DNA of 64,000 nucleotides from Octopus bimaculoides (taxonomy: Eukaryota). Under the pieces are notes generated by a model that was given only the letters and a program-made list of their open reading frames with translations, ran no database searches and had not been told where the DNA came from. Position numbers and translations under genes: made by a program. The DNA is taken from assembly GCF_001194135.2 (NCBI RefSeq), contig NC_068993.1:44745460-44809459 (forward strand), read 5' to 3'. Positions 14,262-63,581 of this stretch are shown here, in pieces (positions within the stretch are counted from its first letter, which is position 1; the number at the start of each line of letters is the position of its first letter).

Positions 14262-15259
14262 NNNNNNNNNNNNNNNNNNNNNNNNNNNNNNNNNNNNNNN
14301 NNNNNNNNNNNNNNNNNNNNNNNNNNNNNNNNNNNNNNNNNNNNNNNNNNNNNNNNNNNNNNNNNNNNNNNNNNNNNNNNNNNNNNNNNNNNNNNNNNNN
14401 NNNNNNNNNNNNNNNNNNNNNNNNNNNNNNNNNNNNNNNNNNNNNNNNNNNNNNNNNNNNNNNNNNNNNNNNNNNNNNNNNNNNNNNNNNNNNNNNNNNN
14501 NNNNNNNNNNNNNNNNNNNNNNNNNNNNNNNNNNNNNNNNNNNNNNNNNNNNNNNNNNNNNNNNNNNNNNNNNNNNNNNNNNNNNNNNNNNNNNNNNNNN
14601 NNNNNNNNNNNNNNNNNNNNNNNNNNNNNNNNNNNNNNNNNNNNNNNNNNNNNNNNNNNNNNNNNNNNNNNNNNNNNNNNNNNNNNNNNNNNNNNNNNNN
14701 NNNNNNNNNNNNNNNNNNNNNNNNNNNNNNNNNNNNNNNNNNNNNNNNNNNNNNNNNNNNNNNNNNNNNNNNNNNNNNNNNNNNNNNNNNNNNNNNNNNN
14801 NNNNNNNNNNNNNNNNNNNNNNNNNNNNNNNNNNNNNNNNNNNNNNNNNNNNNNNNNNNNNNNNNNNNNNNNNNNNNNNNNNNNNNNNNNNNNNNNNNNN
14901 NNNNNNNNNNNNNNNNNNNNNNNNNNNNNNNNNNNNNNNNNNNNNNNNNNNNNNNNNNNNNNNNNNNNNNNNNNNNNNNNNNNNNNNNNNNNNNNNNNNN
15001 NNNNNNNNNNNNNNNNNNNNNNNNNNNNNNNNNNNNNNNNNNNNNNNNNNNNNNNNNNNNNNNNNNNNNNNNNNNNNNNNNNNNNNNNNNNNNNNNNNNN
15101 NNNNNNNNNNNNNNNNNNNNNNNNNNNNNNNNNNNNNNNNNNNNNNNNNNNNNNNNNNNNNNNNNNNNNNNNNNNNNNNNNNNNNNNNNNNNNNNNNNNN
15201 NNNNNNNNNNNNNNNNNNNNNNNNNNNNNNNNNNNNNNNNNNNNNNNNNNNNNNNNNNN
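14262..15259. other. Assembly gap (largest); others at 1137-1197, 6553-6748, 12343-12412, 38264-38363, 55935-56189, 61787-62528
   Basis: N runs. Confidence 1.
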
Positions 15260-21039: not shown

Positions 21040-21278
21040 TTACCGTTTGCCTCGCTTACTGGCTGGTGGAGGTGGTTTTTGTAATTGAAAAGCTCTGTTC
21101 TGGCCTCCAGCTAACTGTTGTCCATCTCCGGTTCCAAAGTTGGGTTGCGTTGTCGACAGATTATTGAATGAGAATGTTGCTCCAGTTGCAGTGTTGGGTT
21201 GTGTACCGAGTAGCCCCGACTGTGTTGTTGTGCTTCCTGATGTACCAAATAGACTTCCTGGTGTGTTGAGGATCGTTC
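21040..21278 (-). CDS. NUP58: NUP58 last coding exon (GTILNTPGSLFG...SKRGKR*)
   Basis: ttttgttag| acceptor, TAA at 21042-21040. Confidence 0.94.
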
Positions 21279-24200
21279 CTAACAAAACAGGTGACAAAAG
21301 AAATTCAAGGATTGTGACGACAACAGAATCAATTCTAATCAAAATGTTATTCATATACAGAAAGATTAATTCACTTCTACAATGTCCACGCACTCACACA
21401 TCAGATTCTAAACATTGTAATACATGCTTTTTAAAGAGAAGCTAAAATTTTAATTGAAGAACATGCGAGCAATGTATTTTACTTAATCGATTTTTTTTTT
21501 CTGTACAACCTGGAAAAAAAAATATTGTAATTAGTCAATAAGGAAACAGAACTTCAACAAATGCATAAACAACAACTTTTCATTTAACCCTTTAGCATCC
21601 AGATTATTCTGTCAAATGTAATGCTTATTTACTCATATTGTTTTTCAATTCGTCATGCATTATCTTCTAGCTTTGAGATGTTGAAGATTGTTTATTTTAG
21701 AGTGAAATTATACTGTAGATGGCAGAGGCCAGATCTGGCCAGTTTGAACATACAACAGAATATTTTGGCTGGATATGGCTGGTTTGAATGCTAAAGGGTT
21801 AAATTGTCCAGATCCAGCTTATCACACTTATCCTACAATGTAATTCTATAAATAAACAATCGCATCATTGAAATCTCATATCTTTGAGATAATGCATGAT
21901 TATTTCATAACGATGTGAATAAATAAGTAAAGCATTACATTGGACAGATCTGAATGCTAAAAGATTAAGGTAAAATTTTGTAAATATTATCATTATTAAA
22001 TTCTTTAAATTGTTTGTGTGAGTGTGAAAGAGAAAAAAATTTAGTTTTTGTCTTGATTTTGTGCAAACTGAAAGATTTTTTGAAACTATTTCTAGTCACC
22101 GACTTAGCGCATTACCATACGTGTTACTAATTATCCTATTTAATTCTGAATGAACTAACATTCGCTAAAGGGTTGAGAATTTCATTTAATCATTAGTACT
22201 GTCTTGTTTCTATATTTTAGATTTGAAAAGTGGGAAACAATTAAGCTCCCTTATACCTTGTTCAGATAAACGTGGAAGTCAAAGAAATGGAATTATTAAT
22301 TCTCCATATCTACCATATTCGATGGCATATAAGATGGACTTTTTCCCCAAAAAAACTTGTCTCAAAAGGATGACCTAGGGTGCTATATGCAAAGTCAGGA
22401 CTCCCATAAGCTTTAATGTACTAATAACATTTTTCCTTGAAATATAGACTGCTACAATTGAGGCAGATCTGATATGCCCATGCATCTTTTATGCCATCAA
22501 ATACAGTAATTCCAGGGACCCTCTGCATCAGTGGTCCTCAACTGTGGGCCATATAAAGATTTTTGTGTAGAAATTTATGTGCAATAAATTGGTTATATCT
22601 CCACAATACACAAAATATTAAAATTTTTTATACATTTCCTATTTAATTATAATGGTATTCTAGGATTTTTTTTTAAACATTGAATAGCTTTGAGGGTTCA
22701 GTTGAGTGAAATAGGAATCAAGGGGGGGGGGGTCCATAGGCAAAAATAATTGAGAACCATGGTTGTTTGGCTTAAAATATCAATCAAATTTTCTTAAATC
22801 ACATTTGTATGTGTAAGACTATGTCATACAAAGATAAACTGGTCATGGCTAGAATGCTTCTAATCATAAATTTGCTCAGGGCTGACCTGGGTCTCATGCA
22901 GAAAAAAACATTGTACAATGAAAGGTAAACCCCGGGCCAGTTTGGTTTGTGCAACTCATTTTCAATTCTTGGTTAAATATTTTATTCCAAGTAACAAATG
23001 CTTTTGATAAAAATCATAACATATGAGCCTTGTAAAGTAGGAATAAAATTTATTTCCTTTCTTGAAGAATTTAAATAAAAAATGTGTTGTGTGCTAATTG
23101 AAGATGGGCAGCCACAGACGGAGAAATGATGAAGTCAGATCTTTGGATGCTGGTGATCTCCAAAGATGAAATCAAAGGCAGTTGGAAACACACTCATCAG
23201 CAGACATGTCAAATGCATATTAGTGCTTTATAGTACTAAATTGAGGCAGAAAAATTATACTACTGGGGATAAGTTTAGTATCAAAATTTCTTGGTAGAAA
23301 AATTTAACAGATTCTTTTCCCTATTGCTTGAGACGTTTAAACTATCTCTTTCCTACCCATCATACCTACTTATAGCTACGCAAACTGGGATATAGAAAAT
23401 TGTCTTGGTCATGAAAACATGGATTCATGTTACAAAATGTTGAGCCTCCAAGGAAAGAGTTTGACTTCCTTTTGAGTTGTTCAGCTAACTGCAAACCGTT
23501 CAACAGTAAGCAAACAGCTTAGTGTATGACTACGACAAGGACAATGAATTGAAAGAATCATTAGAGGGTTGGACAAAATTTCTGGTATTTATTTCCAGTT
23601 CTCAGTTCAAATCCCACTAAGGTTAACTTTGCTTTTAACTCTCTGGATCTTATATAATTGACTGTACTCTTTACAAGCTTTAATTATCTCCATGACCACC
23701 CACCATAATATAAGACAACACTCAAAATTATTTTGCTGGTAACATTACGGTAATTAAGGTTTTGAATTGCGTTTGGGGGGAAAAAAAAAAAAAAAAATCC
23801 AAGGCTACTTCTACTTTAACAATCAAAACATTGTATGTGTTTGATAATACTTATGATACTCCTAGCAATCTGCTGTGGTAATTAGTTAAAAACCATGGTT
23901 ACAGACTAAGCACATATTTTACAAGTAGTTAAGTTGAGGTCCACACCCACCTCCTTTATTGCTGTTATACCTTGCACTTCTCTCCTTATGACAACCAATT
24001 AGTCATAATTTCATACTGATATTACATGTAGACTGAAAAAAAAGTCCGTAACCTTACCGACAATAACATTTTCAGTGTTAGTAGTTTCAACAGTAGGATT
24101 TTCAATTTGATCAGAACTAATGGTCTTGGAGTTTTTGATGTACAAGAGGAGAAAGTCCTGAATACACAGAATTTTAGCTATTCATTTGATTGAGTGAAGT

Positions 24201-27200
24201 TTCAGCTTTAAAACAAATGAATATAAATATATATACATATAACATGGCTACAGTCACTTAATTGCTATATTTTTTTAGTCCCCCCCCCCCGCCGCCACCT
24301 CCTCTCAGATGCTACCTTGTATCAAATCAATAGTCAAGAACCACTTAAATAACTGTTACTAATAAAGTTTGAAGATAATATCAACAAAAAGACAAAGCAT
24401 CCCAATTCATTGAATAAATAAAATGTATAAGAAATAACTAGAAAGTCAAGACATTAGCAAGTTTTAGCTTTGTTATATATATGACAGCAATATTGAAATT
24501 AAACAATCTCTACAAACTAGTCATAGATCAAGCATTTTTTTTTTTCTTTTCTAAGTTATTGCATTTTATCCAGCATTCCAGGACATGCAAATTCTATGAA
24601 AACCAATGAAAGCAACATGCATTACAGCCAGTGCACAATAGACTGTGCGGAAATAGAGAAAATAATATTAAATACTATAATTATAATATATTATTGTTTA
24701 AATCTTTTAGAAAACAAACAAAATGTCCTTTTTTCTTTCTTTAAAAAAAAAGACATCTTAAATTTGTATAATAATTGTTTGGCAATCTTAAGCACACTCA
24801 AAATAGAAAAGAGAACAGCTAGCAGGCCACACTATTATTTGCAAACACAACCTCTCATTTATAAGATATGATGTTTAAAATAATGTTACCCAACCAACTG
24901 GATAGAAAATTGTTAAGTAGTAATGTGTTATATTACTGTTTCTAAACTTGTTTATTGCCAGAAACATGAGATACATTCCAAATGAATACAGAGTCGAAGT
25001 TTCAAACCAGAAGAAAAGAGATTGGTCACACAGGTAAGGGGGTTGATGAGTAGAGTACCAAAAAGAAAGATAGCTGAAGGTGTACTCAGAAGTAAGTAAA
25101 TCAAAAATGAAAAAAAACAAACAAAAACAAAAACCCCCAAAAAAACACCTGATTTATTGGTTGAGTCTAGAATGAAATGTTTTTTGAAGTTTAGAAGAAA
25201 GATAGGGTCTGTTGAAAACAGGTATGTCACACATGCTGTAACAAAGAAGCACCATGACCATAGAGAGAAGAGCAAGATTATAAGAACAATTAATTCTAAC
25301 CTTAGAAAACCATTGAGTGTATTATACATATTATATATATATATATATATATATAAATATATATATATATAAGAGATGGAAATCATCTTCCTCCTACCAG
25401 ACTGAAATTTCAAGAGGTTATAATTGGGATTTTGTTTTCATAAACCGAAATTAAGTTGAGGAAAAAAGGAAAGAAATCTGAAATAATTTTTTGTTTCTAA
25501 CATTTAGAATATCTTGGTTGTGGAGTTAAAAAAGCTCGTTTTGCAACCATGTGGTTATAGGTTTAGTCCTGTCGTGCAGCACATTGGGCAAGTATCTTCT
25601 ATTGAGCTGACCAATGCGTTGTGAGTATATTTGGTAGGCGGAAACTGAGAGGAAGCCTGTCATGTATATGTATGTGTGTGTGTGTGTGTGTGCGTGTTTT
25701 TGCCCCCCCCCCCCAACAACTACCTGATAACTGATGTTGGTTTGTTTACGTCCTCATGATTTAGTGGTTTGACAAAAGAGAGTGATAGAATAAGTACCAG
25801 ACTTAAAAAGAAGTACTGGAGTCAATTTGTTTGACTAAACCCTTCAAGACAGTGCCACAGTTCAATGACTGAAATGAGTAAAAGATGTGTTTATACCTTT
25901 TTCTTTTTAACTGAATTTAATTCAACTTCTTACAGTATTTTTTAAAATGTTTTTATTCATTTCATCACTCTTTCCATTTCAGTTTACAAAAACTAAAATT
26001 TCAAATTTTAATCAACTTCAAAATTTCTAACTGGGAAAGGAATTAAAATGAAGACTGAAGCAAAATTTCCATACTCAATATTTATATATATATATACACA
26101 CACATATGTTTTATTTAATCAGGTGCACACAGAAAGGAAGGAGTAGGGAGGGAGAAAGAAAAAAAACCCTTAATTAGATTAAGTTTACTTAATAAGATAA
26201 TCAACCCAAACTAGAATAAGAAACTCACTTGCACTAGAAGTCAAAAGGCCACAAGAGAACATGCACTGCATTAAAGAACAATGATGGTTCTCTCATGACC
26301 AAAATTTCACAGGAATTTAATATTTTCAACCTGCAAAACAGATTTAAGAAAAAAAATACAAACAAGCTCTGAATAGCTAAAATATCTATTAAACAATATT
26401 TCAAAGGGTTAATATGTTGTGATGGGCAGAGAGGGGAGGCGAAGCGGGTGGTGGGATTAGCTTTATTAGTTAGTCGGTCTTCGAGGATTTTAAAAATATT
26501 ATTTGTAATTTATTTAACGATCTATATGAGTAAACATTATGAATTGGATCATTTGAAGTTAGGAGTTGGTATTTCAGACAAAAACTAAATTAACAGAAAA
26601 AAAACAACAAATAAATAAACAAACAAAAATGGTACAAATGTCTTGAAAATGTTAAAAATTAATAAATGAAGATGACAAGGGAGACAACTGACAATTTAAA
26701 AAAAACAAAACAAAAAAAATTATCAGTTATTGGATGAAAGTTACATATCCGAAAAATATTGAATGAAATGGATTAAAATTTTAACATAAATATGGTATTA
26801 ATTTAAAAGCTAAAAGAAAATCCAAAATTTGCAAAATAAAAATTTAAAAAAATCATTTGCAGAAAAATATTATTTAAGCCCATTGAAAGGTAGTTTTCAA
26901 TAAAGCTACTCAAAATTCTAGTTACTAATGTTAGTAATAATGAAGTTATATCATGAGTGAATTTAGTAAGCACAAATGTCGCAAATATTTCAGCTTAGAT
27001 AATTCTAATGGGTATAACTTTCTAATTTGAAATTGAAAACAAAAAAAAGGGAAGAATGGGGTACAAAGCTCCTAATATTTTTAGTAATGCAAGAAATTTC
27101 AGTTTTAAGTTTTTTTCCTTCTTTTCATAGAAAAAAGAAATATGATAAATTTAATTTATTTTTATGACTTACAAACATATGATAGCATTTATGAACATTT

Positions 27201-30200
27201 CAAACCAACAGGAAAAAAAAAAAAAGGCAATTTCGGGAAAAAAATATGCCACAAGCTTAGATTTTATAAGTTGATATCCGTAACACTTCTTTCAGGGATA
27301 TCTAAGTAAGTCATAAGTCAATTCTACCTTAGCTGAAGGGTGGGTTGTAAGCACAAAGCTCTTCTAAGAACAATACTAATGTTGGTTTGCATTTTATCCC
27401 AGAGAAATTTATTCAATGGACCAGATTTACACACTGGACTTTTTCACCGCTGACAGTATTCTAAACTGACTCTTTTTTCATTTGCTTGACAAAAATAAAA
27501 AAGTGAGAGCAGCCTGATCCTTTAAGAACCAAATTAAATTAATGATAGGTGAAAGCATGGTTGAGTGATAAGAAGTCTGCTTCCCAACCACATGGTTTCA
27601 GGTTCAAGCTCATAGCATAGCAACTTGGGCAGTGGCTTTTACAATAGTTTTAGGCCAACGAATACCCTTGTGAGTGTATTTCAGTTAACAAAAACTGTGT
27701 GGAAGCCCGTTTACAAATATATATTACATACATAAGTATGTGTGTTACTGTCTCTCTGCTTTCACATCATATAATTGTAAATGAGTGTCAGTTATGGTGA
27801 AATATTATCTTACTTGCAAACAGGTGAGGATTGGAGACAGTAAGGGTATGTGGCTATAGAAAATCTGCCTCAATAAAGACTCTCCAACCCATACCAGCAT
27901 GGAAAAGTAGCTGTTGTAATGATGATGATGATAATGATGTATACATACCTACCACCGTTACTAACCTTAATGAATAAAACTGCGATGGCTCTTGGAGAAG
28001 ATTTCAGTAATTTTGTTCAGCATGTCGAAGCAGCTATATATTACAATATGTGAGACAGATCCCACACTTAACAACAGATGGTGTAAATTACACCTAAATT
28101 CCAAACTGAATCTTTCATAAGTAGCTTTTAGATAATCTGGCTTACTGGGATGGTTAGATAGTATAATCTTTATCTTTTACTTGTTTCAGTCATACTGGGG
28201 CACTGTCTTGAAGGGTTTTCTTTGAACACACTGATGCCAGTACTTATCTTGACATATTCTATTGGTCCCTTTTGTTAAACCACTCTACTACAAGAATGTA
28301 AACAAACTAACATTAATTGCCAAATAGTGATGGAGGACACAAGCACATACAGGTGATGGGCAATCACAGTTACCATCTACCAAATTCACCCACCAAGCAT
28401 AGGTCAGTCTAGGGTTATTATAGAAGACACTTGTCCAAGGTGCGGCACTAAGGGACTGAACTCAAAACCAGCTATGCCTATAGTGAATAAAATTTCTTAA
28501 AAAAATATTCACTAGTTTCCATTCACCAAATGTAATCAAGCTATCACAAAATAAGTCACATACACTACTACATTATTCTTATCTTTAGAATTCACAGTTA
28601 ACTCCCCTCAAGATTTCGGTTCAATTGATACAACTCCTTATATTAATATTTAACACCTCTCAATTATTGCATCATATATTTGTTTCAAATTTTGGCACAA
28701 GGCCAGCAATTTTGTGGCAGGGATAAGTCAATTACATTGACCTCCAGTATTCAACTCGTATTTGTTTTATCGACCTCAGAAGGATAAAAGGCAAAGTAGA
28801 CCTTGGTGGAATTTGAACTCAGAATGTAAAGATGGATAAAATGCTAAATATTTTGCCCATTGTGCTAATGATTCTGCCAGTTTGCAGCCTTTTTATTGTA
28901 TCATATATTAAAGAGAAATAACTGGTGTTGCCGTCACTATTAACACATAAATATATCAAAATTTATTTAAATATTTTTTTACATCAGTTTGTAGCTATAT
29001 TCTCTTGAATGTTACACAATCTCATTTCTACTCATACATACCTGTTACATAGGTTTCTGTGCCAGGTAAAAATAAATTGGCCTTACTTGGCATTTAAAAA
29101 AATATGATAAATAAAGGCGTTTTATCAGAACATCTTCAGCACTTCCTGATGGAATTATGAAAAGCAACTGATATATTAATTTTGATGGACAAGTACATTC
29201 TCTCATTGTCTCCGTTAGTGTATAGGATTAGAAATATTTTAATGTTTAGCTGTTAAGAAACTCACTTTGAAACCATATGGTTTTGGGTTCAGTCCTACTG
29301 TGCAGCACCTTGGGCAAGTGTCTTCTACAATAGAGACTGAATTGAACAATGCCTTGTTAGTGAATTTGGTAGATGGAAAGAGTGGTGGGAACCTGTGAAC
29401 CATGGAATAAATGTAACACCATATATGCCACTTTTTACTTATTATATCTGAGAATACGTGTTATAGTGTTTGTCTCTCTCATCATTTGACAAGCAGAGTT
29501 GGTTTGTTTATGTCCCCACCACTTAGCAGTTCAACAAAAGTGACTGAGAGAATAAGTACCAGACTTAGAGAAACATGTACTGCGGTCAATTTATTCAACA
29601 AAGCCCTTCAAATGGTGCCCCAGCATGACCACAATCCAACGACAAACAAGATAACTCAATTATATAATTGAATGGACTGCAGAGGGTGATTTGGTTGAAT
29701 CAGGCGTTTGAAGTGAAACTTAAACATATTAATAACTAGGATGAACAGAAGTCACTTAATGTGATGCTTTTTTCTACAAATTATATTAAGACAAACTTTG
29801 AAGTTAATAAAGATATGTAGGAGAAATCACTAAATAACATTGCACTATAAGTAATATTAAATATTATTTGTAAACAAGACTTTCACATTGAAAATGAGGG
29901 CAAGAAAAAAAAAAAAAGTTCATTATCATTCTTTTAGCCTCAGGTTCTAAGGCTTTCAGTGTGTGGCCATCACTTCTTTTTAGGAGTATCCAGAATTACA
30001 TTGTCTATTTAAGATAAAGTATGTAAAAGAGATTTGGCTGCTATTTCTAGTGACCATGTAGAAAGGTTCTTTGTTATCTAGTATATATTTGAAATGGTTT
30101 GCATGCTGCAAGTGTATCTGTTATGTGTTAATTTCATCACATACACAGAATGTGTATGTATGTATGTATATATAGCAGACAACTCAACCAGGAGTCAACT

Positions 30201-31360
30201 TTGATATAATCAATATATATTATTACAGTGCTGAACGGTGACCTCACTGGGCTGGTTCCACATAAAAAGCACCCGGTACACTCAGTAAAGTGGTTGATGT
30301 TAGGAAGGATACCCAGTCAAAGAAACCATACCAAAGCAGACAGAGGATCTTGGTGCGCTCCTCCGGCTCACCAGCTCCTGCTGAACTGTTCATCCCATGC
30401 CAGCACGGAAAATGGACATTAAATGGTAAGGATTTAGTTAGATCTCTTTCTCGTCAACTCCAGTAGGAGCTGGCTTTGATTTTCATTGCCCTTATGTTTG
30501 ATGAGAATAGAGGAACAGTTATACAATGAGATCAATTCAACTGACTCCTGAAAATTTATAGCCATGTGCTAATCTAAAAAATATTCGTTATTGTTAATAT
30601 TATTAGCCACTGTCATATCACCAAAAATTGAATTTGTGCCACATTTCCTCCAGATTTTCTCTTTAAATGACAATTACACCCCCTACAGTGAATACAGGTA
30701 TTATTTTTAAATGTCAGGATATGAAAGTGAGAGGTGTCAACTGTCACAATCAATATATGTAGGAACATATTAACCACTGGTAGGGACACCGTATTTAGTT
30801 ATCTAACCATAATATTCTATCAAGTACATAGAAGGCTTTATAAGTCAATACCATGTTAGCAGTGTGATTCAATCACTTTTTAAAGTTATCTCAACAGATT
30901 TTCTATAGAAACTAGAGTCAGCACTGAGATTTACGAATGTTTTGTATACTCCCAGTGCTGGCTCTAAATTCTATAGAAAATGTGAAGAGATAACTTTAAA
31001 AAGTGATAGGAATCTATGTACAAGTAAACCCTCAAGTATATGATGAAACAGTATCTACTAGTTTAAAGCGTCATATCATTAGATTTTCTCCTCACAAATA
31101 CTGGGGGATTTAACAGCAAACTTGTTTTTCATAACATTTAATTACCTATATTTATATAATTAATAATATAAGAAATGATTTGGAAATCATCAGCAGTAGC
31201 TAAATGTCATGTTGGTAACTTTACTGAAAGTATCCTGGGCTAATAACCAAAAATCTTAAACTGTTCTGCAAAAATGCATTTCAAAAGTACTTTATAAATC
31301 TATTTCAAAACCTAAATATTAATGCAACAGCACCATTGTCATATCTGATTAGTTAAACTA

Positions 31361-31405
<45 letters not shown>

Positions 31406-34400
31406 CTTCAAATTGGTTCAACATTTGTGTAAAGAAAAGGAAATTTTTATTAAATGAAATGTACCTTCATTCAATACACGCACTTTCACACACAAATTGC
31501 ATACTATCATATAAAAAATTCTTTAAAATTACAGCAATGTAGACACAGAGAAATACAGTTGTAAATGTGCAATATAGAATGGGTGCACACATGTACATAC
31601 AAACACAGACAACATATACAACAATGACAGGAGCTAATGCAAAACTATAGGGACAAACAACCAGAAATACAATTCTAAGCGTCATCACAACGAAGGAAAG
31701 ACAATTACTTCTTTTAGATATTAATGGATGCAGAGAAAATAGGACATGTTTGATTCTTTAAATATTTTTTATTAAAGGAAAAAAAAAATTATTCATCAAT
31801 ACGGTTTTGTAAATATAAACCAGTAACCGTCTAATGCCTAGAATATTTTGCCTTTCTCTTGTTGACAGGTTATAGGAAGAAGTCTATAGCATGATTATAT
31901 TTTTATTTGCTTCCCCTATCTCTTAGTATCAGCAAATGAAGTTAAGCGTACAGGTTTTTTTTTTTTTTGTTGAAGCAGATATATTTGGTTCTTGTTTGTA
32001 AAGAAATGTTTACATTACACAGCACTAATGATTCAATGAGGTTTGAAGGAAGAAAAAAAAAAAACAAAAAAAAAAAACAGCCTAAGGCCAAATTGAAAAC
32101 AGCAGACTCGAAAGCTTGGTTGTTTTTTTCTTTTTGTTTCTTTTATAAGCAGTATATAAAATTATTCTTTATTTTACATGTCTGAATTTGCTGTCATTGA
32201 AGAATACTGGTATGTTGTTGGATATCAAATTTTATTGCTCCAACGAAGGGTCCATCTATCAAACAGCTTATTGATTGATTGTCCGACGGGTGTGGTTTAA
32301 AAAATAAAGAAAATCGAGTGGAAGGCAGAGAGAAAAAGAAGAGGAGGGAGAGATAGAGAGGTGGGGGGGTTGGTGTGTGAGTGAGTGAAAGGAAGAGGGA
32401 AGGAGAAAGAAATGGAAAGATAGAGAAAGATCCAGGAAACCTTACCACCCACTAACCTAGAGGTTTCACAGCAGCAGTATTGGAACCAAAGGAAAAGCCA
32501 CTAGTGGAGCCTTGGCCAAAACATGAAAATCCTGAAATGAATAATAATAATGGAAGGAATTATCAATTTAGTTTCAACAAAGCTGTGAGAAAGGAACCAA
32601 AAGCTGGTCTATGATGAACCACTAAGGACAAAAAGAGTAACCTTTAACAATAGCATGTATTTTGCGGCAGACATTGATTTGTCAACATTAAACTATCTTT
32701 AACCTCAAGTTAGTCCAAATATTCACACCTAGTGTATTATATATGCATAATCCAAAATGATTTGTCATGAAAACCCCAAAAAGAAAAATTTGCTCAAGGT
32801 ATGGTAGTACAGAATGATACATATAGGAAATTTGTAATTATCATGTTGTTATTCTGGTTATCATTTTGGCCTTAACCACAAGGTGAGCAAGTTCTGTCGA
32901 CATGTTGGGCTTGTGATTATAATGATCCTTTGATTTCAGGGCTGGGCAGCAAGTTGTGTCCTTGAACAAGGTATTTCACTTTGAATTGTTTCTGTCTGCT
33001 CAATTGAAAAATGAGTACCAGCTGAGAGCTGGTGCAGCCATTTCTCCCTCTTGCTGTCACATTCTCAACATTCCACCAGCACAAGGGCTGGAGGGGCTGA
33101 GAATGTCTATGACTGCTTGGCACTACATAGGGTTACCAAAAACAAGTAGTGAAAGCATGATGTTTGCTCCCATGTCATACTTACTTGCTTGTGATGGCTA
33201 TGGTTTTTAATCTATTCAATTTTTATTTTGGTCCAATGGATCTTTGAAAATAAGAAAAGGATTAGCTTGCTGTGAAAACTCTCAGTCAGAATAAAGACAC
33301 TACCTTGGTCTGATGCCAAATAGATTGTCAGATGGGGGTTGGGAGTGTTGGTTTGGTTAGCTGGAGTAAAAGTGAAGACAAGTGGGCAAGTTTAAGGTGA
33401 ATGACATCTGAATTATCACACCATCAACAATGGGATCAACACAATACTGAAAAGAATAGGGAAGCACATGATAAACAGTGATCCAATCTGCGCCTGATTA
33501 CTGAATATCTTTTACTTGTTTCAGTCATTGGACTGTGGCTTGATGAATTTAGTTGAAGATAAAAAAAACAAAAAAAAAACTACTTATTTAAGTCCTATTT
33601 TATCTGTCTCTTTCACCAAACTGCTAGATTATGGGATATGAACAAACCAACACCAGTTACCATGTGGTGGGCGTGGACAAACAAAAACACACACACATGA
33701 GGCTTCAGCACAATTTCTGTATACCAAATTCACTAACAAGGCATTTGTTGGCCAGAGGCTATGGTAGAAGACACTTTCCTAAAGCATGCACTGGGACTGT
33801 ACCCAAAAACAGGTGGTCGCAAAGCGAGCTTCTTAACTACAGAGCTGTGTCTGTGGCTATTTGGATAAACAAAAGAAAGGAAAAACTATGCAGAGATAGT
33901 TATAGTTGTAGCTGCTTTAACAGCAGTTAGGAATAATTTGTTAGACCTAAAATTTTGAGTAGATAAACACAAGGCCAGACATTTGTAAGAGAAGGTGCAG
34001 AAGGAGTGACATAAAACACAGTTCATGAAGGGCTTTTACAGACACTGGAAAATGGCACTCCAATATCACAATTCCTTTAGAGCTGGATAAGTTGAATTCA
34101 TGCTGTACCAGTGAAAGTAACTAACTACTACGGTAACTACAATAGTGTTAGACTAGAATCCAAGCAAGACACAAAACTCAAGTGTCAGTTGATAGCTGTT
34201 ATCTTGTCATTGGTTCTGTGAGCAAAGAAAAGAATTCCTTTTCTAACAAGCTTGATGCTCCTACCCTACATAACTGTAAATAAGTATTGGAGTCTGGTGC
34301 TGCTACCCAGCTTGCTAGTTCTAGTCAAACCATCCAATCCATGCCAGCATGGACAACGGACGTTAAACGATGATGCTGCAGTTTAGTTTACTATTGAAAG

Positions 34401-44400: not shown

Positions 44401-47400
44401 TTAAAAAAAATAATAATTACTAGAGTTGATTTGTTCAACAAAAAACCCTTCAAGGCAGTGCCCCAGAATGACCACAGTCCAATGATTGAAACAAGTAAAA
44501 GATAAAACACACAAAAAAAGACACTATGGACTTCCATATGGTTTCTGTCTTCCAATTCTCTCACAACACACTGGTTGGCCTGGGACTATAGTAAGAGACA
44601 ATTGCCCAAGGCAGCATGCAGTGGAACTGTGTGGTTGCAAAACAAGCTTCTTAACCACAAAGCCTTCCTCTGTCTTATTGTCTTCACTGGAATACCTTTA
44701 GTTATAAGACTGCTTAGTCATCTGGATTGACCCAGGGTTAAACAAAAATATTAAGCATGGTGATACACAATGCTTAAATACAAAAAAAAAAAAAAAAAAA
44801 AAAAATCGCTGGTCATGGAGTTGAATGTCTTGATCACAGGTCTATTAAATCACAGCTGGCTCAGGGTTAAACAACAATAATTCCATATACAGACAATATG
44901 ACAGGAATTAAACTGAGTGCTAACATTAGTCTGTCTTCTGTATTTATGTTCTAAACGTACAAATATGCTCTTCAGTCACCTCTTGCTTCGCAAAAATTTA
45001 ATCACACATACACACACAATTACATTACTTGTGTGTTAACAAGGTTTTTGTTTCTTTGCTATAAAATACTACAGAACGTCTCAAGAAATATTTTTAGCCA
45101 ACACTGTTACAACTATTGTAAACATTTTGTCTGCTCATCTAAAATATGAGTTGTCAGGTTGCTAAGAAACCTGTTCTACTCTGGCCCCTTTCTCTTGCAC
45201 TCCCATCTTTACTCCTTGCATAAAGTTGCCCTGTCAGGGTTCATAATCTTACAAGTTGCATGGTAACCTCACTAGAGCTTGTGGCAAAAAAAAAAAAAAA
45301 AAAAAAAAAGCTTCCAGTTATATGCTGTAAAGTGGTTGGCATTAAGGACATCCAACTGCAGAAACCATGTCAAACCAGGCATTGGAGTATGATGAAGTCC
45401 CTGGGCCCATTGGATCTTGTCAATCTGTTTAACCCATGCAACATGGACATATGATGATGACGAATATGTGAGTGGATAGAAAAAGGGACACCTTGGTTAA
45501 TGGCTGTGTACTATACTTAACTATTCAAACATATTGCACTATAACCTACCAGAAATTCAATATTTATTCAGTCAAGAAAGCGCATTAAAGATGCCAGTTT
45601 ATCCAGTTTACTTCAGCCTCTAATATTACTAAGTTTATAAATGTAGTGTCATCATCATTTAATGTCTACTGTGCTTACATGGATAAGACAGAATTTGTTG
45701 AGGTAAATGTTTATGGCCAGATGCCCCTTCTGTGACCTACCCTCACCTGTTTCCAAGCAAGGGTGAATATTTCCCTATAGCCCGACAGGTTTGTCACAGA
45801 AGACTGGAAATGAACAACTTTAACCATCATGTGATGTCAAGACAAGGGTATATATACACACACACACACACACACACATCAAGCTTCTTTCAGTTTCTGT
45901 CAACAAAATCCACTTACAAGGCTTTTGGCAGGCCTGGAATTAAAGTAGAAGACAATTGCCCAAGGTGCAATACAGTGGGACAGAACCCAAGACAAGATGG
46001 TTGGGGAGCAACCTTCTTAACCACACAGCTACACCTACGGAATGTGTAGATGAATTGTTTACAATTGTTGCAACACACAACATCAGCTGATAGCTAATAA
46101 ACCTGTAAACAATAGTAACCAGACACGGGATTTTGATGCAAATTTTCTTAATTTTTTCGTTTCTTTTAGTTTGAAATTTCAAAATTCATAAAACTGAAAT
46201 GCTTTCCCATAAATTGCCTAACATGCCAAAGTTTAAATTTAAATTCAAACAAATGAAAAATAACATTACGATATATGTTTACACTCAATTTGCCACTACC
46301 CTGTGTTTCTTTATGAACAGCTACTCAGTTTTATCATTTTAAAATTTAAAATATATATAAAAAACAAACAACCCCCAAAACACAGACTCCACACTTCAAC
46401 TTAGATAAAAAAAAACCCTCAAAAATCTACCCATGACGAGAGGATTTAAAATACATACCTGTTTTGGCAGTAGTGTTTCCAAATAGACTAGTATTGTTCA
46501 TATTTGTTCCAAATGTAGTGCCAGTGCCTGCATTTCCAAACAAACTACCCTGATTATTGAATGGGGTACCAAAACACCTGTGTTGACCAAGAGTGTTTGT
46601 ACCAAGACCAATATTGGGTGGTCCAGCTGAAAATATAAAAATAAATATTAGATGACATCTTGAGTGACAAATCGTAGCAGTATACTGTATTTATATTGTG
46701 AAACTATGCTTACATATCTCTGATGCTTGCAATGTGCATGTATATCTTTACATTGTTTCAAATTGACCTTTGACCACACCCTCATTTTTATTCACTCTTA
46801 TGCACCTACTTCTCATTCTCCTTTATACTCTTGCACCCATTACCACCTCATTGACCTATCTCTCACCTCAACTCATCTATTGTAGTATTCTACTGCTCAT
46901 CCTTTCTGTACAGCCAGCTAGATCAGTGTTTCCTGCATTAAGTCTGGAATCCAGACAATTGAAGAAAACCATCAAGGAGAAAGGCATTGCTGAAACTAGC
47001 CCAAGTGGCTATGGTTGATAAGAGTCTGCAAATGGAACCCTTCTGAAGATGAAGACTAGTTCAGTCCTTGCTGCCCCACTCAGGTGAATGAAGCATACCG
47101 AGCTAAGAGGCAAAACGCATGCAACTCAAGACACCTGCTGACAATAAGGGTTTTCAGCATTACAATGGACTTAGAAGAGCTCACAAAACCCCTGAGTAGC
47201 TCCTGCAGTTTCTGCATGGGATAAAGCATCTCTGCTGTTTATTTCATCTAAAAGGAAAAAAGTAGTTGAGTATAGTGATACTTACAAGGAGCCTGTTGGT
47301 TACGACTAAGAGCAGCGGCAAGAGCAATTGCAGTGGTGCTGGGGAACCCTGTGAAGGGGTTTGGTCCTTGCTGAGATTCAATGCCGGGAATCTCCAAACG

Positions 47401-49832
47401 TTTTGTTAACTTCCGTTTGCTTTCAAACACATCTTTCGTGTCTCCGAGGAATATACGTCGATAATTCAGGTATTTCTCTTTTAAAGTCTACAGAACCAGA
47501 AAACAAAGACAGGATGGTTAGAAGAAAAGCTTTGTTATGAAGAGACTACATTACATAGAATATGACTAGCATATATAGGAGGAACAGCTGATAAACATAG
47601 ACAGTAAAACGTTTTAGATAACATTTTAAACAAGAATATAAAACATCGGACTGATCGGTAAATGTTCATTAAGCTGACCTGTTGCATTTATTACCCAAAC
47701 GTCAGCATAGGTGTGGCCGTGTGATTAAGACACTTGCTTCGCAATCATGAGATCTTGGGTTCAGTTCTATTGTACAGCACTTAGGTTAAGTGGCTTCTAC
47801 TATAGTCCTGAGCTGACCAAAACCTTGTGAGTGGAAATTGAAAGAAGGTTGTTGTGTGGGTGTTAGTATATAACCTTGTCTAAGCAATACAGGGTTGTTG
47901 TAAATGAGCAACAACATCATCATCAGAGAAGTGAGGTTGATAGCTCCCAGTCTTCTATTAAAAAAAAAAAGGAAAACCTCTCTGGCTGTAGTAAATCTAC
48001 CTCAACAAATTCCATCTAACCCATGCAAGCATGAGAAATTGGACATTGAATGGTGAGGATGGTTACAGCTAGCAGTTGTTAAAATAGTTCCAGCTAGCAA
48101 CGTACCACTATCTTTGCAGAAACTAACACATCATCCCTGTTGTATCTTATTCCTGAAACCCCATATCGAACACTTTTACCTATCCTGCCTCCCGAGAACC
48201 ACAACTCTCTGGAACTCAACCTCTCTGGTCATGTTTTCTTTACAGACATCAACAAGTTCATCATCATTTTATTGCCCACTTTCCCATGCTTGCATGAGTC
48301 AGACAGAATTAGTTGAGGCAGCTTTCTATGGACAAATGCTCTTCCTGTTGCCAATCCTCACCTATTTCCAAGCAAGGTAATATTTCCCCAGGACCAGACA
48401 TGTGCTTTATAGAAGACTGGATGTGAACAACACTGCTACTGGTATGATGATAACGTTCATTTACAATCTTCATGCGATATCAAGACAATGGGACACACAA
48501 ACATGCATCCACACATATATACACATACATCTACCTATCTATATGTACAGTTAAATGAGAGAGGGAGGGGTGAGGACAAAAGGATAAAAAGGAAACACAG
48601 GTAAGTTATTCACACAATGCAATTGGAGTTAATAATCAAACAAGACATAGCTTACTTTTACAGATTCATGAACTTGGTGAAAGTGGGCTGCAAGTGCAAG
48701 GAAATTTTCATGTGATTTGTGAAGCAACATTGTTAATTCTGAAATAGAATTTGACAACATTTATAAATTGTTATTGCAAATGTAGAGAAGGTAAGAAAAA
48801 AAAAGAAAGAAAACAAAAGCAGTTTCATATTTTTTGAATACATAAAATGAAAGGCTTATGAGATCAATAATGTCCACTTTTTCATGCTTGCATGGATTGG
48901 ACAGGATTTGATGAGACAAATCTTCTACATAGGGATGTCCTTCCTGTCATCAACCCTTACCCATCTCATGGTAAGGTAATATTTCCTCATGACCAGGCAT
49001 GTTTTCACAAGACTGGAAGTGAAGGATACGGCTGTACAATGGTGATATTCATCTACAACTACCATGAAATTTCAAAATTAGGAGACGCCAACTTATTCTA
49101 GGAGTAAATATAACAACTCAAAAGTACAGCTACACAGATAATAAAGCTTTCACACAGGATCTCGCTCTCTTGGAAACATTCACCCAGCTGTAAATAGATG
49201 ATACAGTTTTTTTTGCTATAAGAAAGAGAGAATACTGTTTAATTCAGTATGTTGCAGTTCTAGAGAAGAAAGACAGTGTGAACCGTTTAGTGTAGGGGTT
49301 GGGAGACAGCCAAGATGAGTTAAGTAGGCCTGATTGGAGAGGGTATGTAGCTAACCACTTCAGATGAGCAGATGTAAAATAAACGAACTGTAAGGGCACA
49401 TCTGGTAAGGAAAAGTCAAGCAATAAAACAACCACTCCTGCAGGAAATGTATTAAAAAGGTATTGATTAAATGGTATTGTCTTTTAATGTTCCTTTTCCA
49501 CACTGGTATGGGTTGGATGGTTTGACAGGAACTAAGGAGTCTTAGGGCAGTGTCAAACTCCAGTGTCTACTCTGACATGGTTTTTAACCACTCGATGCCC
49601 TTCCTAATGCAAACTGCTTTAAAGAGTGTACTTGGTGCTTTTTATAGTATCAGCATTGGTAAGGACACTAAGTACTCACAAGACAAGACCCACTCCCCAA
49701 ACTGAGTAGAGAGTAGTACTGAAGGATGTGAAAGCATGATAGAAGGACAGGAGTAGGTGTCCTGCTGAAGAGGTGAATATATGGTTTATCTGTCTGAAAG
49801 AGATGAAGATGTGAAGTCAAGGTATAAGTTAA

Positions 49833-49867
<35 letters not shown>

Positions 49868-50225
49868 GAGATATAGTGAAAAGAGTGTGATAGATGATTA
49901 GAGAGGAGGACTCAGATGGACACAGTGAATATCAGTTTGGGGAAGGGGAAATGAAAAAAGAAATAAGAGTGGTTTGGGAAAGAAGATGTGATAAGGGACA
50001 ATAGTAAGGATACAGTGTGAAAATTAGTTTTGTCTTTTTAATGACAGAAATAAAAATTAGAATAAGTGATAAAGTAGTAATGAAAGATATTAACCTTCAG
50101 GAGAGAGCCTACTTGGTTGATGTAGGGAAAGGATGTGACTCTCCAAGTTCTGGATTTCACCTTTATAGGCTTTCATCTGGATTTCAAAATCTTCAAAGAG
50201 ACTCTGAAAATATCTAGAAAAGATG

Positions 50226-50257
<32 letters not shown>

Positions 50258-53200
50258 GTTTATTGTTTTCTTTACACAGACAATAAATCAAGAAATCATC
50301 TTTAGCATTGAAACTAGTCACATCAAGCATCTCACATTTACCCCACAATGTCATTCTAAAAATAACCAATCACATTAGTGAAACCTCAAAGCTATGAGAT
50401 AATGTGAACAAATAAGCATTACATTTGACAGATTAATTTGATTGCTAAAGGATTAAATAATTTCATTAAGTTAACAAAATGTGTTTATTAAAAGCCAACA
50501 TAACACATAATATAATCACAGTTGATTAAAATTGTTACTCCCAATTACACCACCTCTAGTATATAGAAACACCAGTTCGAGTCTAGTAGTAAAATGTTTA
50601 TAGGCGAATAGGAGAGCAACAAATGGCTGAGTTGATAGAAAACTGATCAAATAGAAGAAAGATCAGATATACACATCCGGTCATTTTGTCTCTCTCTCTC
50701 TCTCTGACAGACAAAGAATTGGCGATTAATGTAATAATAAAAATTGGCAAACAACAATCAAAATTTATTTATTTTATTTTTTATTGTCTGGTTTGCTGAT
50801 GTACAAGGGTGGCAGGAGAAATTATCCAAGTTTAAAAGGGGCTGACTGCCTACATTTGAAAGAGGAAATGGATACAAATAAAGAAGGGGATACTTAACAA
50901 AAACTAGAACAGTAAATGAAATAAAGCAAAGTAAAAAAGAAAGCATATAAAATAAACAAATTTCCATCAAATACCAGAAATTTCCAACAAACTAGCATAA
51001 AAGTGAAACTATGTTTAACAAAAAAAAAAAAAGAAGTAAAAAAAAAAACGAAGAAAAAACACCAACTTACTCAGTTGGGGCAACATTCTCGTCTTGAAGA
51101 ACAGCAGACATATCTTCTGTTCGTTGACCCATTTCAGTATTTTTCAGTTCCTGCAAAAGAGTAGTAAATATCAAAGCAAGTTAACAAACAGCTTAACATA
51201 TATGGAATGTGTTGTATCCCTTTATAATATCCACTGTGTCACTTCAATTTAAAGATAGTAAGTAGAGTATGATTTGAAAGAGATTTTGCTGCTATCTTTA
51301 GCAGACCAAGTGACCATATAAAGACATGATTGATTGCATTAAAGACAGCACTGAAAAAGCTAGGAGATTCACTGAAATAGATGAAGGGCTTCAAGTGACA
51401 TACCTGTACTGACTCTTTCTTCAGTTTTTCAATCAACACAGCATTCCTCTGTACACCATTAGACACACTTCCAAGGATCTGTCGCAATGCTGTTAGGTCT
51501 GTCTGTACCTTTATCATAGATTTTGTAGACATTCGAGAAATGTTTTCTCGTATAGCTTTCTCTGATTTTATATATTTTCTATAAAAACGACAAAAAAAGA
51601 TGACAAAAAGAAAAGGTTAACAGGCTTTTAAATTAAAGAAAAAATAAACAAACAAAAACCAAAAACATTTTTAAACTGAAGAATTTTTCTATTTAAAAAT
51701 GCAATTGATATTCTTATAACAAAGGTAGCATGCTGGGCAAGATGCTTAGCAGCATTTTGTTCATCTTTACTTTCTAAGTTCAAATTCTGCTGAGGTCAAC
51801 TTCGTCTTTCATCCTTTTGGGGGGTCAATAAAATAAGTACCAGTTGAGTACTGGGGTCAATGTAATTGACTTAGTCTCTCCCTGGAGATTGTTGGCTTTG
51901 TGCCAAATTTTGAAACCAATATTCTTATTAAAACAAAGGTGGCAAACTGGCAGAATTGTAAGCAACTAGGACAAAATTATTTAATGACATTTCCTTCTGA
52001 CTCATTATGTTCCGAGTTCAAATTCAACCAAGGTCAGCTCTACCTTTCATCCTTTTGGAGGACAATAAAAAAAAGTACCAGTTGAACACTGACTGAGGTC
52101 AATGTAACAGACTTGTTCTGCACTCCCTAAAAATTTGCTGGCCTTGTGCCAAAATTTGAAACCAATATTCTTATTATAATATTTTCTATAAGATAGTCAG
52201 AGGATGGAGGCGAAAGCCTATGACCATTGCAGCCCACTCAGTAAACTGGTGAGATTAATATGGCTGATGGTCAAACGTGGTAGGGAAGAAAGCTAACAAC
52301 AGAGTAAATTCACCCAACAAAATTAAATAGAAAAGAGGATCAGATCTACCATGTCTAGTATATTAGGAGTCAATGAGGAAGCCTCTACAACTTCACTCAA
52401 TCTGCTTGAAACAACAGCCAAATCTTTCCCAAACCATACGTTATTGTCACATTTACAGAAACAAATTGCAAATTTGGTTATGTGCATCTGGAAATTTTAC
52501 AGATTTTACTATGGATTAAAAATGCAAGCTTGGTAATGAGGGTAGAATCTTTAGTTTTTAGGGAAATATTAAGAATAAAAAAAGTCCCTGAAAAACTTAC
52601 TTTAGGGGTTCTACACAAACTAGCAGCTGCTGTGGTAATTGTGTTTCTTTCAAAACTTTGGAATTCCTTAAAAAATAGAAACATAAAAAACATAAGTTAA
52701 AACAACACAAAATTTACAGAATATAACTAGGTTCAAACTTGATAGAATTGGATTAAAAGATGTCTAGGTCTATTCTATTCTATCGATATTTTATATTGTT
52801 TCAAACAAAACCTTTCTATGTTTCCAGTCAGGTTATAAATGTATACATGTATAAACAGGCATAGCTGTGAAGTGCAGGTGTAGCAGAGTAGTTAAGAAGT
52901 TTGCTTCTCAACCACATAGTCTTGGGTCCAGTCTCACTGCATAGCACCTTGGGTGAATGAATTCTATAACCTAAAGAAACTGAAAGAAGCCTGTTGTATA
53001 TATTTATTTATATGTGTGTGTGTGCATGCAAATGTGTATGTTTGTATCTCTTGACATTGCTTAATAGCTGCAAAAGATTGTCATACAAGCAATGTCATTC
53101 ATTTTCAATATTCTGCGAGAATATACAAAGGGAAATATTACCCTGCTCGTTAACAGGTGTGGGGTTGGTGATAAGAAAAGCATCCAGCTGATGAAAACCT

Positions 53201-57865: not shown

Positions 57866-58094
57866 CTGCAAATTAAAATAAAACAATTATTAAACTTAAT
57901 AATTACAAGTGTGTATGAGAGAGAGAGAGACAGACAGACAGACAGAAGAGGAGGAAACATTGTTATGCTTTAATATTTTTTTCTAAATTCATTAAGTGTG
58001 CAGTGATTCCAATGAAAAACTGAAATAGTATTTATTGATAACAGATCCAATTAAGTAAGAACTCAATATAGCATCACAATGGCAGCCACATCAA

Positions 58095-63364: not shown

Positions 63365-63581
63365 CATCATCATCATCGTTTAACGTCCGCTTTCCATGCT
63401 AGCATGGGTTGGACGATTTGACTGAGGACTGGTAAAACCGGATGGCAAAGCCAGGCTCCAATCTGATTTGGCAGAGTTTCTACAGCTGGATGCCCTTCCT
63501 AAAGCCAACCACTCAGAGAGTGTAGTGGGTGCTTTTATGTGTCACCCGCACGAAGGCCAGTCAGGCAGTACTGGCAACGGC
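63363..63581 (-). mobile_element. Young (GAT)n-tailed retroposon within a (TA)n tract
   Basis: Near-identical to the 55623 copy; (TA)n on both sides; older opposite-orientation tail copy at about 63140-63330. Confidence 0.85.

What the first reader, a model, noticed from the sequence alone, without database searches (positions are those of the whole stretch)
32446..32531. Two competing donors bracket an in-frame UAG in a NUP58 FG exon: candidate Nup45-like short isoform
Seen: on the - strand the exon ends ...AAA CCT CTA G|GT TAG TGG GTG|gtaagg. The proximal donor (gttagt) gives the full-length frame. The distal donor 11 nt on (gtaagg) is about equally consensus-like and includes TAG. The protein would end ...VKPLG*, losing the last 79 aa (FG tract and KRGKR tail). 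Spliced to the last exon, the stop is only 6 nt before the final junction, so by the 50-55 nt rule it should escape NMD. Known: vertebrate NUP58 yields Nup58 and a C-terminally shorter Nup45 by alternative splicing. Inference: a cephalopod may have a parallel or ancient switch. This exon also sits between the two giant introns (11,178 and 13,927 nt), while the other introns are about 0.25-2.3 kb.
Basis: partly seen in the sequence, partly recalled or inferred. Interest (0 to 1): 0.7.

Follow-up and report, generated by a model that had tools for sequence, protein, structure and literature searches.

The report
Conserved twin splice donors truncating octopus NUP58
The octopus nuclear-pore gene NUP58 has two splice donors 11 bases apart with a stop codon between them, which can produce a shorter protein that is already annotated in the database, and the same arrangement is present in brachiopod, ribbon-worm and scorpion genomes.

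Summary
On the minus strand the 75-nt exon 32531-32457 ends CTAG|GTTAGTGGGTG|GTAAGG. TAG (32454-32452) is in frame.

The window is Octopus bimaculoides NUP58. RefSeq already lists the predicted short protein for this species: isoform X3, 714 aa, ending ...AAVKPLG. X1 is the full-length form (792 aa). X2 skips this exon.

No transcript of the octopus itself could be read. Sepia contigs reach the same truncation by running on into the intron or by including an 83-nt exon with a stop.

The twin-donor-plus-stop arrangement is also present in the genomes of Lingula, Tubulanus and the scorpion Centruroides, with a 10-nt spacer. It is absent in Lymnaea, Dreissena, a frog and a bat. The Octopus and Sepia introns are no more alike than shuffled sequence from 46 nt into the intron onward, so chance is very unlikely.

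Best reading: an old alternative-donor switch that removes the last 78 aa, which hold the distal FG tract and the conserved KRGKR tail. It resembles vertebrate Nup45 but probably uses a different junction. The isoform is already annotated. I found no paper describing the mechanism or its deep conservation.

The parts
32457..32531 (-). Penultimate coding exon of NUP58: 75 nt, phase 1 at both ends, encoding ...GFSCFGQGSTSGFSFGSNTAAVKPL(G). It is itself a cassette exon.
   Evidence: sequence and frame. (tblastn of X1). RefSeq X2 (P0207) joins ...TTAKTG directly to TILNTPGS, which skips exactly these 25 codons.
32451..32456 (-). Upstream donor D1 (GTTAGT). Its use gives the full-length frame (X1).
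   Evidence: X1 (P0212) reads VKPLG|TILNT. Predicted U1 duplex -7.7 kcal/mol, with a mismatch at +3.
32452..32454 (-). In-frame TAG formed by intron positions +3 to +5 of D1. It ends the protein at ...VKPLG in any RNA that is not cut at D1.
   Evidence: Read-through peptide 'G*'. X3 (P0117) ends ...AAVKPLG.
32446..32456 (-). 11-nt spacer GTTAGTGGGTG between the two donors.
   Evidence: 11 of 11 bases identical in Octopus, Sepia (L001, L004) and the L002 species. It is retained in the spliced L002 mRNA.
32440..32445 (-). Downstream donor D2 (GTAAGG). Its use keeps the TAG, 6 nt before the last exon junction.
   Evidence: Six contiguous base pairs with U1, -8.5 kcal/mol. L002 is spliced exactly here to the last exon. 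GTAAG is conserved 10-11 nt after D1 in four phyla.
32300..32439 (-). Pyrimidine-rich (C/T) tract that begins directly after D2. Possible binding platform for splicing regulators (inferred).
   Evidence: sequence. 87% pyrimidine in the 60 nt that start at the last base of the D2 hexamer. Partly shared with Sepia over about 28 nt (17 of 28).
21279..32445 (-). Last intron: 11,167 nt measured from D2, 11,178 nt from D1.
   Evidence: From 46 nt into the intron onward, similarity to the Sepia intron equals that of shuffled sequence (0.479 against 0.479).
21040..21278 (-). Coding part of the last exon: (G)TILNTPGSLFG...FQLQKPPPPASKRGKR plus stop TAA at 21042-21040. These are the 78 aa missing from the short isoform. 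In a D2-spliced mRNA this exon becomes 3' UTR.
   Evidence: The tail ...QLQKPP..KRGKR is nearly invariant across animal NUP58.
46459..46626 (-). Preceding C-terminal FG exon (GPPNIGLG...NTTAKT). It is followed by the 13,927-nt intron 46458-32532.
47284..57866 (-). Upstream NUP58 exons present in the window. Approximate bounds from tblastn: 57866-57783, 56709-56536, 52665-52600, 51580-51404, 51156-51070, 50218-50096, 48748-48656 and 47487-47284. Residues 1-297 of X1 were not located in the window.
   Evidence: Pfam PF15967.

Best explanation
Exon 32531-32457 of Octopus bimaculoides NUP58 ends in two competing 5' splice sites that use the same acceptor at 21279/21278.

Cutting at the upstream site D1 (TAG|GTTAGT) joins ...VKPLG to the last exon. 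This gives full-length Nup58 (X1, 792 aa).

Cutting 11 nt downstream at D2 (GTG|GTAAGG) keeps the in-frame TAG. This gives a 714-aa protein (X3) with the N-terminal FG region, the coiled-coil core and about half of the C-terminal FG region. It lacks the distal FG tract and the conserved basic QLQKPP..KRGKR tail.

The stop lies 6 nt before the last junction. The mRNA should therefore be translated rather than degraded, and it keeps the normal 3' end.

Shown: the sequence anatomy, the annotated short and long proteins in this species, D2 splicing in a related decapodiform, and genomic conservation of the arrangement in four phyla.

Inferred: that D2 is the route used in the octopus, that the two sites compete for U1, that the downstream pyrimidine tract regulates the choice, that the mRNA escapes NMD, and that loss of the tail changes pore function.
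For: - Anatomy and frames.
- Species and isoforms. X1 is full length, X3 ends VKPLG*, X2 skips the exon. O. sinensis X5 and O. vulgaris CAI9732025.1 have the same short ending.
- Direct D2-to-last-exon junction: contig L002 reads ...TTAG GTTAGTGGGTG|GCTCCC... followed, out of frame, by ...FQLQKPPPPASKRGKR*. The last exon starts at the same base as in Sepia L003.
- Constraint: spacer plus D2 are 17 of 17 identical between Octopus and Sepia, while the intron from +46 onward is at shuffled-sequence similarity.
- Genomic twin donors with an in-frame stop: Lingula TAG|GTTAGTTGTG|GTAAGC, Tubulanus TAG|GTTAGTTTTG|GTAAGC, Centruroides TAG|GTAAATAGCG|GTAAGA. RefSeq short isoforms end exactly there: KPLG* in Lingula and Tubulanus, KPLGK* in Centruroides.
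- Further short isoforms ending RPLG*, KPLGK* or NPLGK* in oysters, a scallop, a spider and insects.
- Chance co-occurrence across four lineages is about 1e-11.
- U1 pairing is comparable in every species: D1 -6.6 to -7.7, D2 -8.0 to -8.5 kcal/mol.
Against: - No octopus transcript or junction read could be examined. X3 is known here only as a protein. Read-through of D1 without any splicing gives the identical protein.
- Two independent Sepia contigs (L001, L004) run past both donors into the intron. A third (L003) uses D1 and then an 83-nt stop-containing exon. So D2 is not the only route and may not be the main one.
- RefSeq X isoforms are computational models.
- The arrangement is missing in the gastropod and bivalve loci examined, so it is dispensable in some molluscs.
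- The 50-55-nt NMD rule was established in mammals and is untested in cephalopods.
- No protein-level evidence is available.
Confidence: 0.72

Rival explanations
1. The short isoform comes mainly from failure to splice the last intron, by intron retention or by cleavage and polyadenylation inside the 11-kb intron. The TAG at +3 to +5 of D1 ends translation. D2 is conserved for another reason, for example as a U1 binding site that suppresses premature polyadenylation or supports recognition of the weak D1.
For: - Sepia contigs L001 and L004, from two separate runs, continue about 300 and about 160 nt into the intron past both donors.
- AATAAA motifs occur within about 300 nt in L001 and in the octopus intron.
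- Read-through gives exactly G*.
Against: - L002 shows a clean D2 splice.
- Neither Sepia contig ends in poly(A), so both could be pre-mRNA.
- AATAAA is common in AT-rich introns.
- The spacing of D2 is kept at 10-11 nt in four phyla.
- This rival can coexist with D2 splicing.
Confidence: 0.2
2. D2 is only a helper. U1 binds the strong GGTAAG and cleavage is then placed at the nearby D1. The D2-spliced RNA is a rare by-product without function. The TAG is a fail-safe stop for unspliced RNA.
For: - D1 has a rare T at +3 and interrupted U1 pairing, while D2 has six contiguous pairs.
- From general knowledge, U1 bound at one site can activate cleavage at a neighbouring site.
Against: - Short isoforms ending at this junction are annotated independently in cephalopods, a brachiopod, a nemertean, chelicerates, bivalves and insects.
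- None of the four decapodiform contigs that span the junction shows the plain D1-to-last-exon splice.
- In Sepia a separate stop-containing exon also places its stop within 39 nt of the last junction. That points to selection for a translated truncated product.
Confidence: 0.08

Closest known systems
Vertebrate Nup58/Nup45 (rat p58/p45; Hu, Guan and Gerace 1996, PMC2120945; Hu and Gerace 1998 as cited in PMC2674657)
   Same: One NUP58 gene gives a full-length form and a C-terminally shorter form by alternative splicing. The short form keeps the N-terminal FG region and the coiled-coil core that builds the Nup62 complex.
   Different: Rat p45 is described as the N-terminal FG region plus the coiled coil only. 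Some vertebrate models end right after ...QQQQPATG (Rhinatrema X6, carp), which is further upstream. The octopus form keeps about half of the C-terminal FG region. The bat and frog last-intron donors have no second GTAAG. Frog X3 does end at the last junction (...SLSAG*), but genomic read-through would give GLYFN*, so it must arise another way.
RefSeq isoform X3 of O. bimaculoides NUP58 (XP_014786233.1), with O. sinensis X5 and O. vulgaris CAI9732025.1
   Different: This is a pipeline annotation only. The transcript structure (D2 splice or intron end) could not be seen here, and no paper on it was found.
Short NUP58 isoforms of Lingula anatina (X2), Tubulanus polymorphus (X3) and Centruroides (X3/X4)
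   Same: They end at the homologous KPLG junction. Their genomes carry the same TAG|GT.A.T...G|GTAAG twin donor with an in-frame TAG.
   Different: The spacer is 10 nt instead of 11. In the scorpion D1 is GTAAAT and the product ends GK*.
Tandem alternative 5' splice sites as a general class
   Same: Two GT donors a few nucleotides apart share one acceptor. Their U1 binding sites overlap, so they should compete (the competition is inferred).
   Different: The spacing is not a multiple of three, and the outcome is set by a stop codon built into the upstream donor itself. Nucleotide-level conservation across phyla is unusual for this class (my own knowledge, not tested here).

Membership tests
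NUP58 / Nucleoporin_FG2 (PF15967) | Match to the Pfam family above its curated cut-off | tested here: met
   Protein encoded by the window: PF15967, E 2.3e-73, 248 bits against a cut-off of 32.3.
NUP58 / Nucleoporin_FG2 (PF15967) | Orthology to annotated NUP58, with FG regions flanking a coiled-coil core and the ...QLQKPP..KRGKR end | tested here: met
   Exons are 100% identical, or nearly so where tblastn ran past an exon end, to O. bimaculoides XP_014786213.1. The tail is nearly invariant in an alignment of 22 animal sequences.
Nup45-type short isoform | Made from the same gene as Nup58 by alternative RNA processing | tested here: met
   X1 and X3 differ only after ...VKPLG. Transcript variants at this junction are seen in relatives.
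Nup45-type short isoform | Keeps the N-terminal FG region and coiled coil, and lacks the C-terminal FG region | tested here: inconclusive
   The N-terminal FG region and coiled coil are kept. Only the last 78 aa are lost, and about 80 aa of C-terminal FG sequence remain. Rat p45 is described as lacking the C-terminal FG region.
Nup45-type short isoform | Truncation at the same intron as vertebrate p45 | tested here: inconclusive
   The end of rat p45 could not be read. Vertebrate models truncate at two different junctions. The bat and frog loci lack the twin donor.
Nup45-type short isoform | Truncated protein present in nuclear pores | not testable with these tools
   Needs a blot, proteomics or imaging.
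Tandem alternative 5' splice sites | Two donors with U1-consensus match sharing one acceptor | tested here: met
   D1 TAG|GTTAGT and D2 GTG|GTAAGG, -7.7 and -8.5 kcal/mol. The same acceptor is used after D2 in L002 and after the cassette exon in L003.
Tandem alternative 5' splice sites | Both junctions observed in RNA of this species | not testable with these tools
   No octopus transcript contigs were in the collections searched. D2 use is seen in the L002 species and D1 use in Sepia L003.
Stop codon exempt from NMD by position | Stop less than 50-55 nt upstream of the last exon junction | tested here: met
   The gap is 6 nt in Octopus, Sepia and L002, 5 nt in Lingula and Tubulanus, and 2 nt in Centruroides. 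It is 39 nt for the Sepia cassette exon. Actual mRNA stability was not tested.

The most novel reading that the evidence does not exclude
The twin-donor-plus-stop arrangement at the KPLG junction may be an ancestral protostome splicing switch. It would have been kept at nucleotide level for more than half a billion years in cephalopods, brachiopods, nemerteans and chelicerates. Isoform endings suggest it also exists in pteriomorph bivalves and insects. It would tune how many Nup58 copies in the pore carry the distal FG tract and the basic KRGKR tail. If so, the Nup58/Nup45 duality is not a vertebrate peculiarity but an old, regulated feature of pore composition.
Probability: 0.55. Interest if true: 0.7.

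Novelty: new member of a known kind. Interest (0 to 1): 0.5.

Why it matters
Why animals make a long and a short Nup58 has been unclear since p45 was cloned in the 1990s. Here the short form turns out to be hard-wired into the donor site itself: a rare T at +3 creates the stop, and a second donor sits 10-11 nt further on. This wiring is shared by distant invertebrate phyla. That argues the short form is functional rather than noise. It also identifies what is regulated, namely the distal FG tract and the conserved basic tail. It gives a compact element of about 20 nt that can be mutated to force one isoform or the other in tractable invertebrates. For genome annotation, it explains why RefSeq lists isoforms ending ...PLG or ...PLGK in many species.

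Tried and rejected
- Conserved RNA structure around the donors: RNAalifold on five species gave -2.6 kcal/mol and no compensatory pairs. Rejected.
- Sepia 83-nt stop-containing exon: no recognisable copy in the octopus intron (blastn-short). It is therefore treated as lineage-specific or too diverged to detect.
- Recoding of the TAG followed by a conserved alternative frame in the last exon: the +2 frame is open for 55 codons in octopus. My by-eye translation of L002 stops after about 29 codons with unrelated sequence. No support.
- Identifying the end of rat or human p45: full-text searches gave only general statements. The held text of PMC2120945 is little more than the abstract.
- A role for the KRGKR tail, for example as a nuclear localisation signal: the literature search was uninformative.
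- SRA accessions: only SRR25114243 could be tied to a species, Sepia esculenta larvae. The species of L002 (SRR27666088) remains unknown.
- The first homology search missed the octopus RefSeq proteins. They appeared only with the profile search.
- The look-up of frog isoform X3 failed because only the longest product of a gene is indexed.

Full report
OBSERVATION. On the minus strand the acceptor ...tcatttcag|G opens a 75-nt exon, 32531-32457, in phase 1 at both ends. It encodes ...GFSCFGQGSTSGFSFGSNTAAVKPL and ends CTA G|GT TAG TGG GTG|GTAAGG. The in-frame TAG is 32454-32452. The last exon starts at 21278 and ends ...FQLQKPPPPASKRGKR, with TAA at 21042-21040. The upstream exon is 46626-46459. 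Splicing D1 to 21278 gives one open frame. The only correction is that the net loss is 78 residues, not 79.

GENE AND SPECIES. The encoded protein matches Pfam Nucleoporin_FG2 (PF15967, E 2e-73). A profile search returned 'nucleoporin p58/p45' of Octopus bimaculoides. tblastn of its isoform X1 (XP_014786213.1, 792 aa) maps residues 298-792 onto the window's minus strand. Identity is 100% where the match stays inside an exon and lower only where it runs past an exon end. The window is therefore O. bimaculoides NUP58. Residues 1-297 were not located; they lie outside the window or in its N-gaps.

THE SHORT ISOFORM IS ALREADY ANNOTATED. RefSeq isoform X3 of the same gene (XP_014786233.1, 714 aa) is identical to X1 up to ...AAVKPLG and stops there. 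O. sinensis X5 and the O. vulgaris model CAI9732025.1 end in the same way. A third form skips exactly this 75-nt exon (...TTAKTG|TILNTPGS): O. bimaculoides X2, O. sinensis X4 and O. vulgaris CAI9732024.1. So the exon sits at a three-way choice. These records show the product, not the RNA route. Cutting at D2 and not splicing at all both give ...VKPLG*.

TRANSCRIPTS IN RELATIVES. The database held four RNA-seq contigs from decapodiform cephalopods that cross this junction.
- L002 (SRR27666088, species unknown) reads ...AAA CCT TTA G GT TAG TGG GTG|GCTCCCTCC.... It continues through the last exon, which carries ...FQLQKPPPPASKRGKR* out of frame.
- L003 is from Sepia esculenta larvae (SRR25114243; PMC10442824). 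It uses D1 and then inserts an 83-nt exon with an in-frame TAA 39 nt before its end. It then joins the last exon at the same base as L002. The product ends ...VKPLDGKPSVDLFSQGNT*.
- L001 and L004 come from two other runs and encode the same protein sequence as L003 over the shared region. They run past both donors into the intron.

None of the four shows the plain D1-to-last-exon junction. Assembly paths are not quantitative. Still, this suggests the truncating forms are not rare.

CONSTRAINT. Between Octopus and Sepia the last 45 nt of the exon are 42 of 45 identical. The 11-nt spacer is 11 of 11 and D2 is 6 of 6. The next 28 nt are 17 of 28. From +46 onward the introns are exactly as similar as shuffled sequence, 0.479 against 0.479.

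The homologous junction was then read in other genomes:
- Lingula anatina: AAACCATTAG|GTTAGTTGTG|GTAAGC
- Tubulanus polymorphus: AAACCTTTAG|GTTAGTTTTG|GTAAGC
- Centruroides sculpturatus: AAACCCCTAG|GTAAATAGCG|GTAAGA

Each has an in-frame TAG between the donors. Each also has a RefSeq isoform ending at that point: KPLG* in Lingula and Tubulanus, KPLGK* in Centruroides. In each locus the NUP58 junction is the only AGGT[AT]A site with GTAAG 10-11 nt downstream. GTAAG occurs at about 0.0009 per base. Four independent coincidences therefore have a probability near 1e-11.

Protein endings ...RPLG* (Saccostrea, Ylistrum)...KPLGK* (Argiope) and ...NPLGK* (Anabrus, an unnamed insect contig) suggest the same design in bivalves, spiders and insects. 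The arrangement is absent in Lymnaea, Dreissena, Nanorana and Hipposideros.

MECHANISM. Shown by sequence: D1 owes its stop to a T at +3 (GT-TAG-T) or, in the scorpion, to GT-AAA-TAG. This interrupts pairing with the U1 5' end (-6.6 to -7.7 kcal/mol). D2 always offers six contiguous pairs, GGUAAG (-8.0 to -8.5 kcal/mol). Inferred:
- At 10-11 nt apart the two sites cannot both hold a U1 snRNP, so they compete.
- The balance could be set by factors that bind the pyrimidine-rich tract starting right after D2. That tract is 87% C/T over 60 nt in the octopus and runs on for about 140 nt.
- The stop lies 2-6 nt before the last junction in every species. The D2 mRNA should therefore escape junction-dependent NMD and keep the normal 3' end.

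No conserved RNA fold was found. The product keeps the part of Nup58 that builds the Nup62 complex. It loses the distal FG tract and the basic tail ...QLQKPP..KRGKR, which is nearly invariant across animals. What that tail does is not known to me.

RIVALS. Intron read-through or intronic polyadenylation gives the same protein and is what two Sepia contigs look like. It may coexist with D2 splicing or dominate in the octopus. D2 might alternatively be only a U1 landing site that helps D1. The independent annotation of short isoforms in many phyla argues against that. So does the second NMD-exempt stop in the Sepia cassette exon.

COMPARISON WITH WHAT IS KNOWN. Rat p45 and p58 arise by alternative splicing, and p45 contains the N-terminal FG region and the coiled coil (PMC2120945). 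[quoted passage not shown] The octopus form is similar in outcome but keeps part of the C-terminal FG region. Vertebrate models truncate at two places. One is after ...QQQQPATG, in Rhinatrema X6 and carp. The other is at the last junction, in Nanorana X3 (...SLSAG*). Neither vertebrate locus examined has a twin donor. Homology with the Nup45 junction is therefore not established. No paper linking Nup58 and cephalopods was found.

VERDICT. The isoform itself is already in RefSeq. Direct D2 use in the octopus remains to be shown. What I add is the mechanism, seen in a relative, and its nucleotide-level conservation across protostome phyla. I found no paper describing either. Interest is moderate: a new, well-supported member of a known kind, with a testable claim of great age.

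Noticed in passing
window 32457-32531 (-): The 75-nt exon that carries the twin donors is itself skipped in annotated isoforms: O. bimaculoides X2, O. sinensis X4 and O. vulgaris CAI9732024.1 (...TTAKTG|TILNTPGS). The locus therefore has at least three outcomes.
   Followed up: partly
L003 3191-3273 (Sepia esculenta RNA-seq contig): An 83-nt exon between D1 and the last exon carries an in-frame TAA 39 nt before its 3' end and gives ...VKPLDGKPSVDLFSQGNT*. No recognisable copy was found in the octopus intron.
   Followed up: yes
L001 2186-2488 and L004 1819-1982: Sepia contigs from two separate runs continue past both donors into the intron. Several AATAAA motifs are present but no poly(A) end. 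This could be intron retention, intronic polyadenylation or pre-mRNA.
   Followed up: partly
window 32300-32439 (-): About 140 nt of almost pure C/T on the transcribed strand start directly after the downstream donor. Shorter pyrimidine-rich stretches follow D2 in Lingula, Sepia and Centruroides.
   Followed up: partly
window 786-1016 (-): An open frame matches the mariner-type transposase DDE domain (PF01359, E 1e-17). It is probably a transposon remnant downstream of NUP58.
   Followed up: partly
window 63383-63541 (-) and 55642-55800 (-): Two copies of a repeat give nearly identical 53-aa frames (H.KAPTTLSEWLALGRASSCRNSAK...). Other recurrent frames (RQPLRECSGCF... at about 58804, 8999 and 4975) point to interspersed repeat families in and around the gene.
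   Followed up: no
window 1137-1197, 6553-6748, 12343-12412, 14262-15259, 38264-38364, 55935-56189, 61787-62528: Seven runs of N (2,423 bases in all) are assembly gaps. Two lie in the 5' part of the gene, so some N-terminal FG exons may be hidden.
   Followed up: no
L003 232-1242 (-): The Sepia contig carries a glutamine synthetase reading frame, antisense and upstream of NUP58. It is most likely a chimeric assembly of two transcripts.
   Followed up: no
L010 46655-46680 (Nanorana) and proteins P0029, P0010: Frog isoform X3 ends ...SLSAG* at the last junction, but genomic read-through would give GLYFN*. It must therefore use another exon. Lithobates X1 has an 11-aa insert (AHSPKRMLASS) at the same junction. 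This junction is an alternative-splicing hotspot in vertebrates too.
   Followed up: partly
proteins P0122 and P0216 (Argonauta hians): Both annotated Argonauta proteins end ...AAVKPLR instead of ...KPLG, and no full-length model was seen. The junction sequence may differ there or the model may be off by a base.
   Followed up: no
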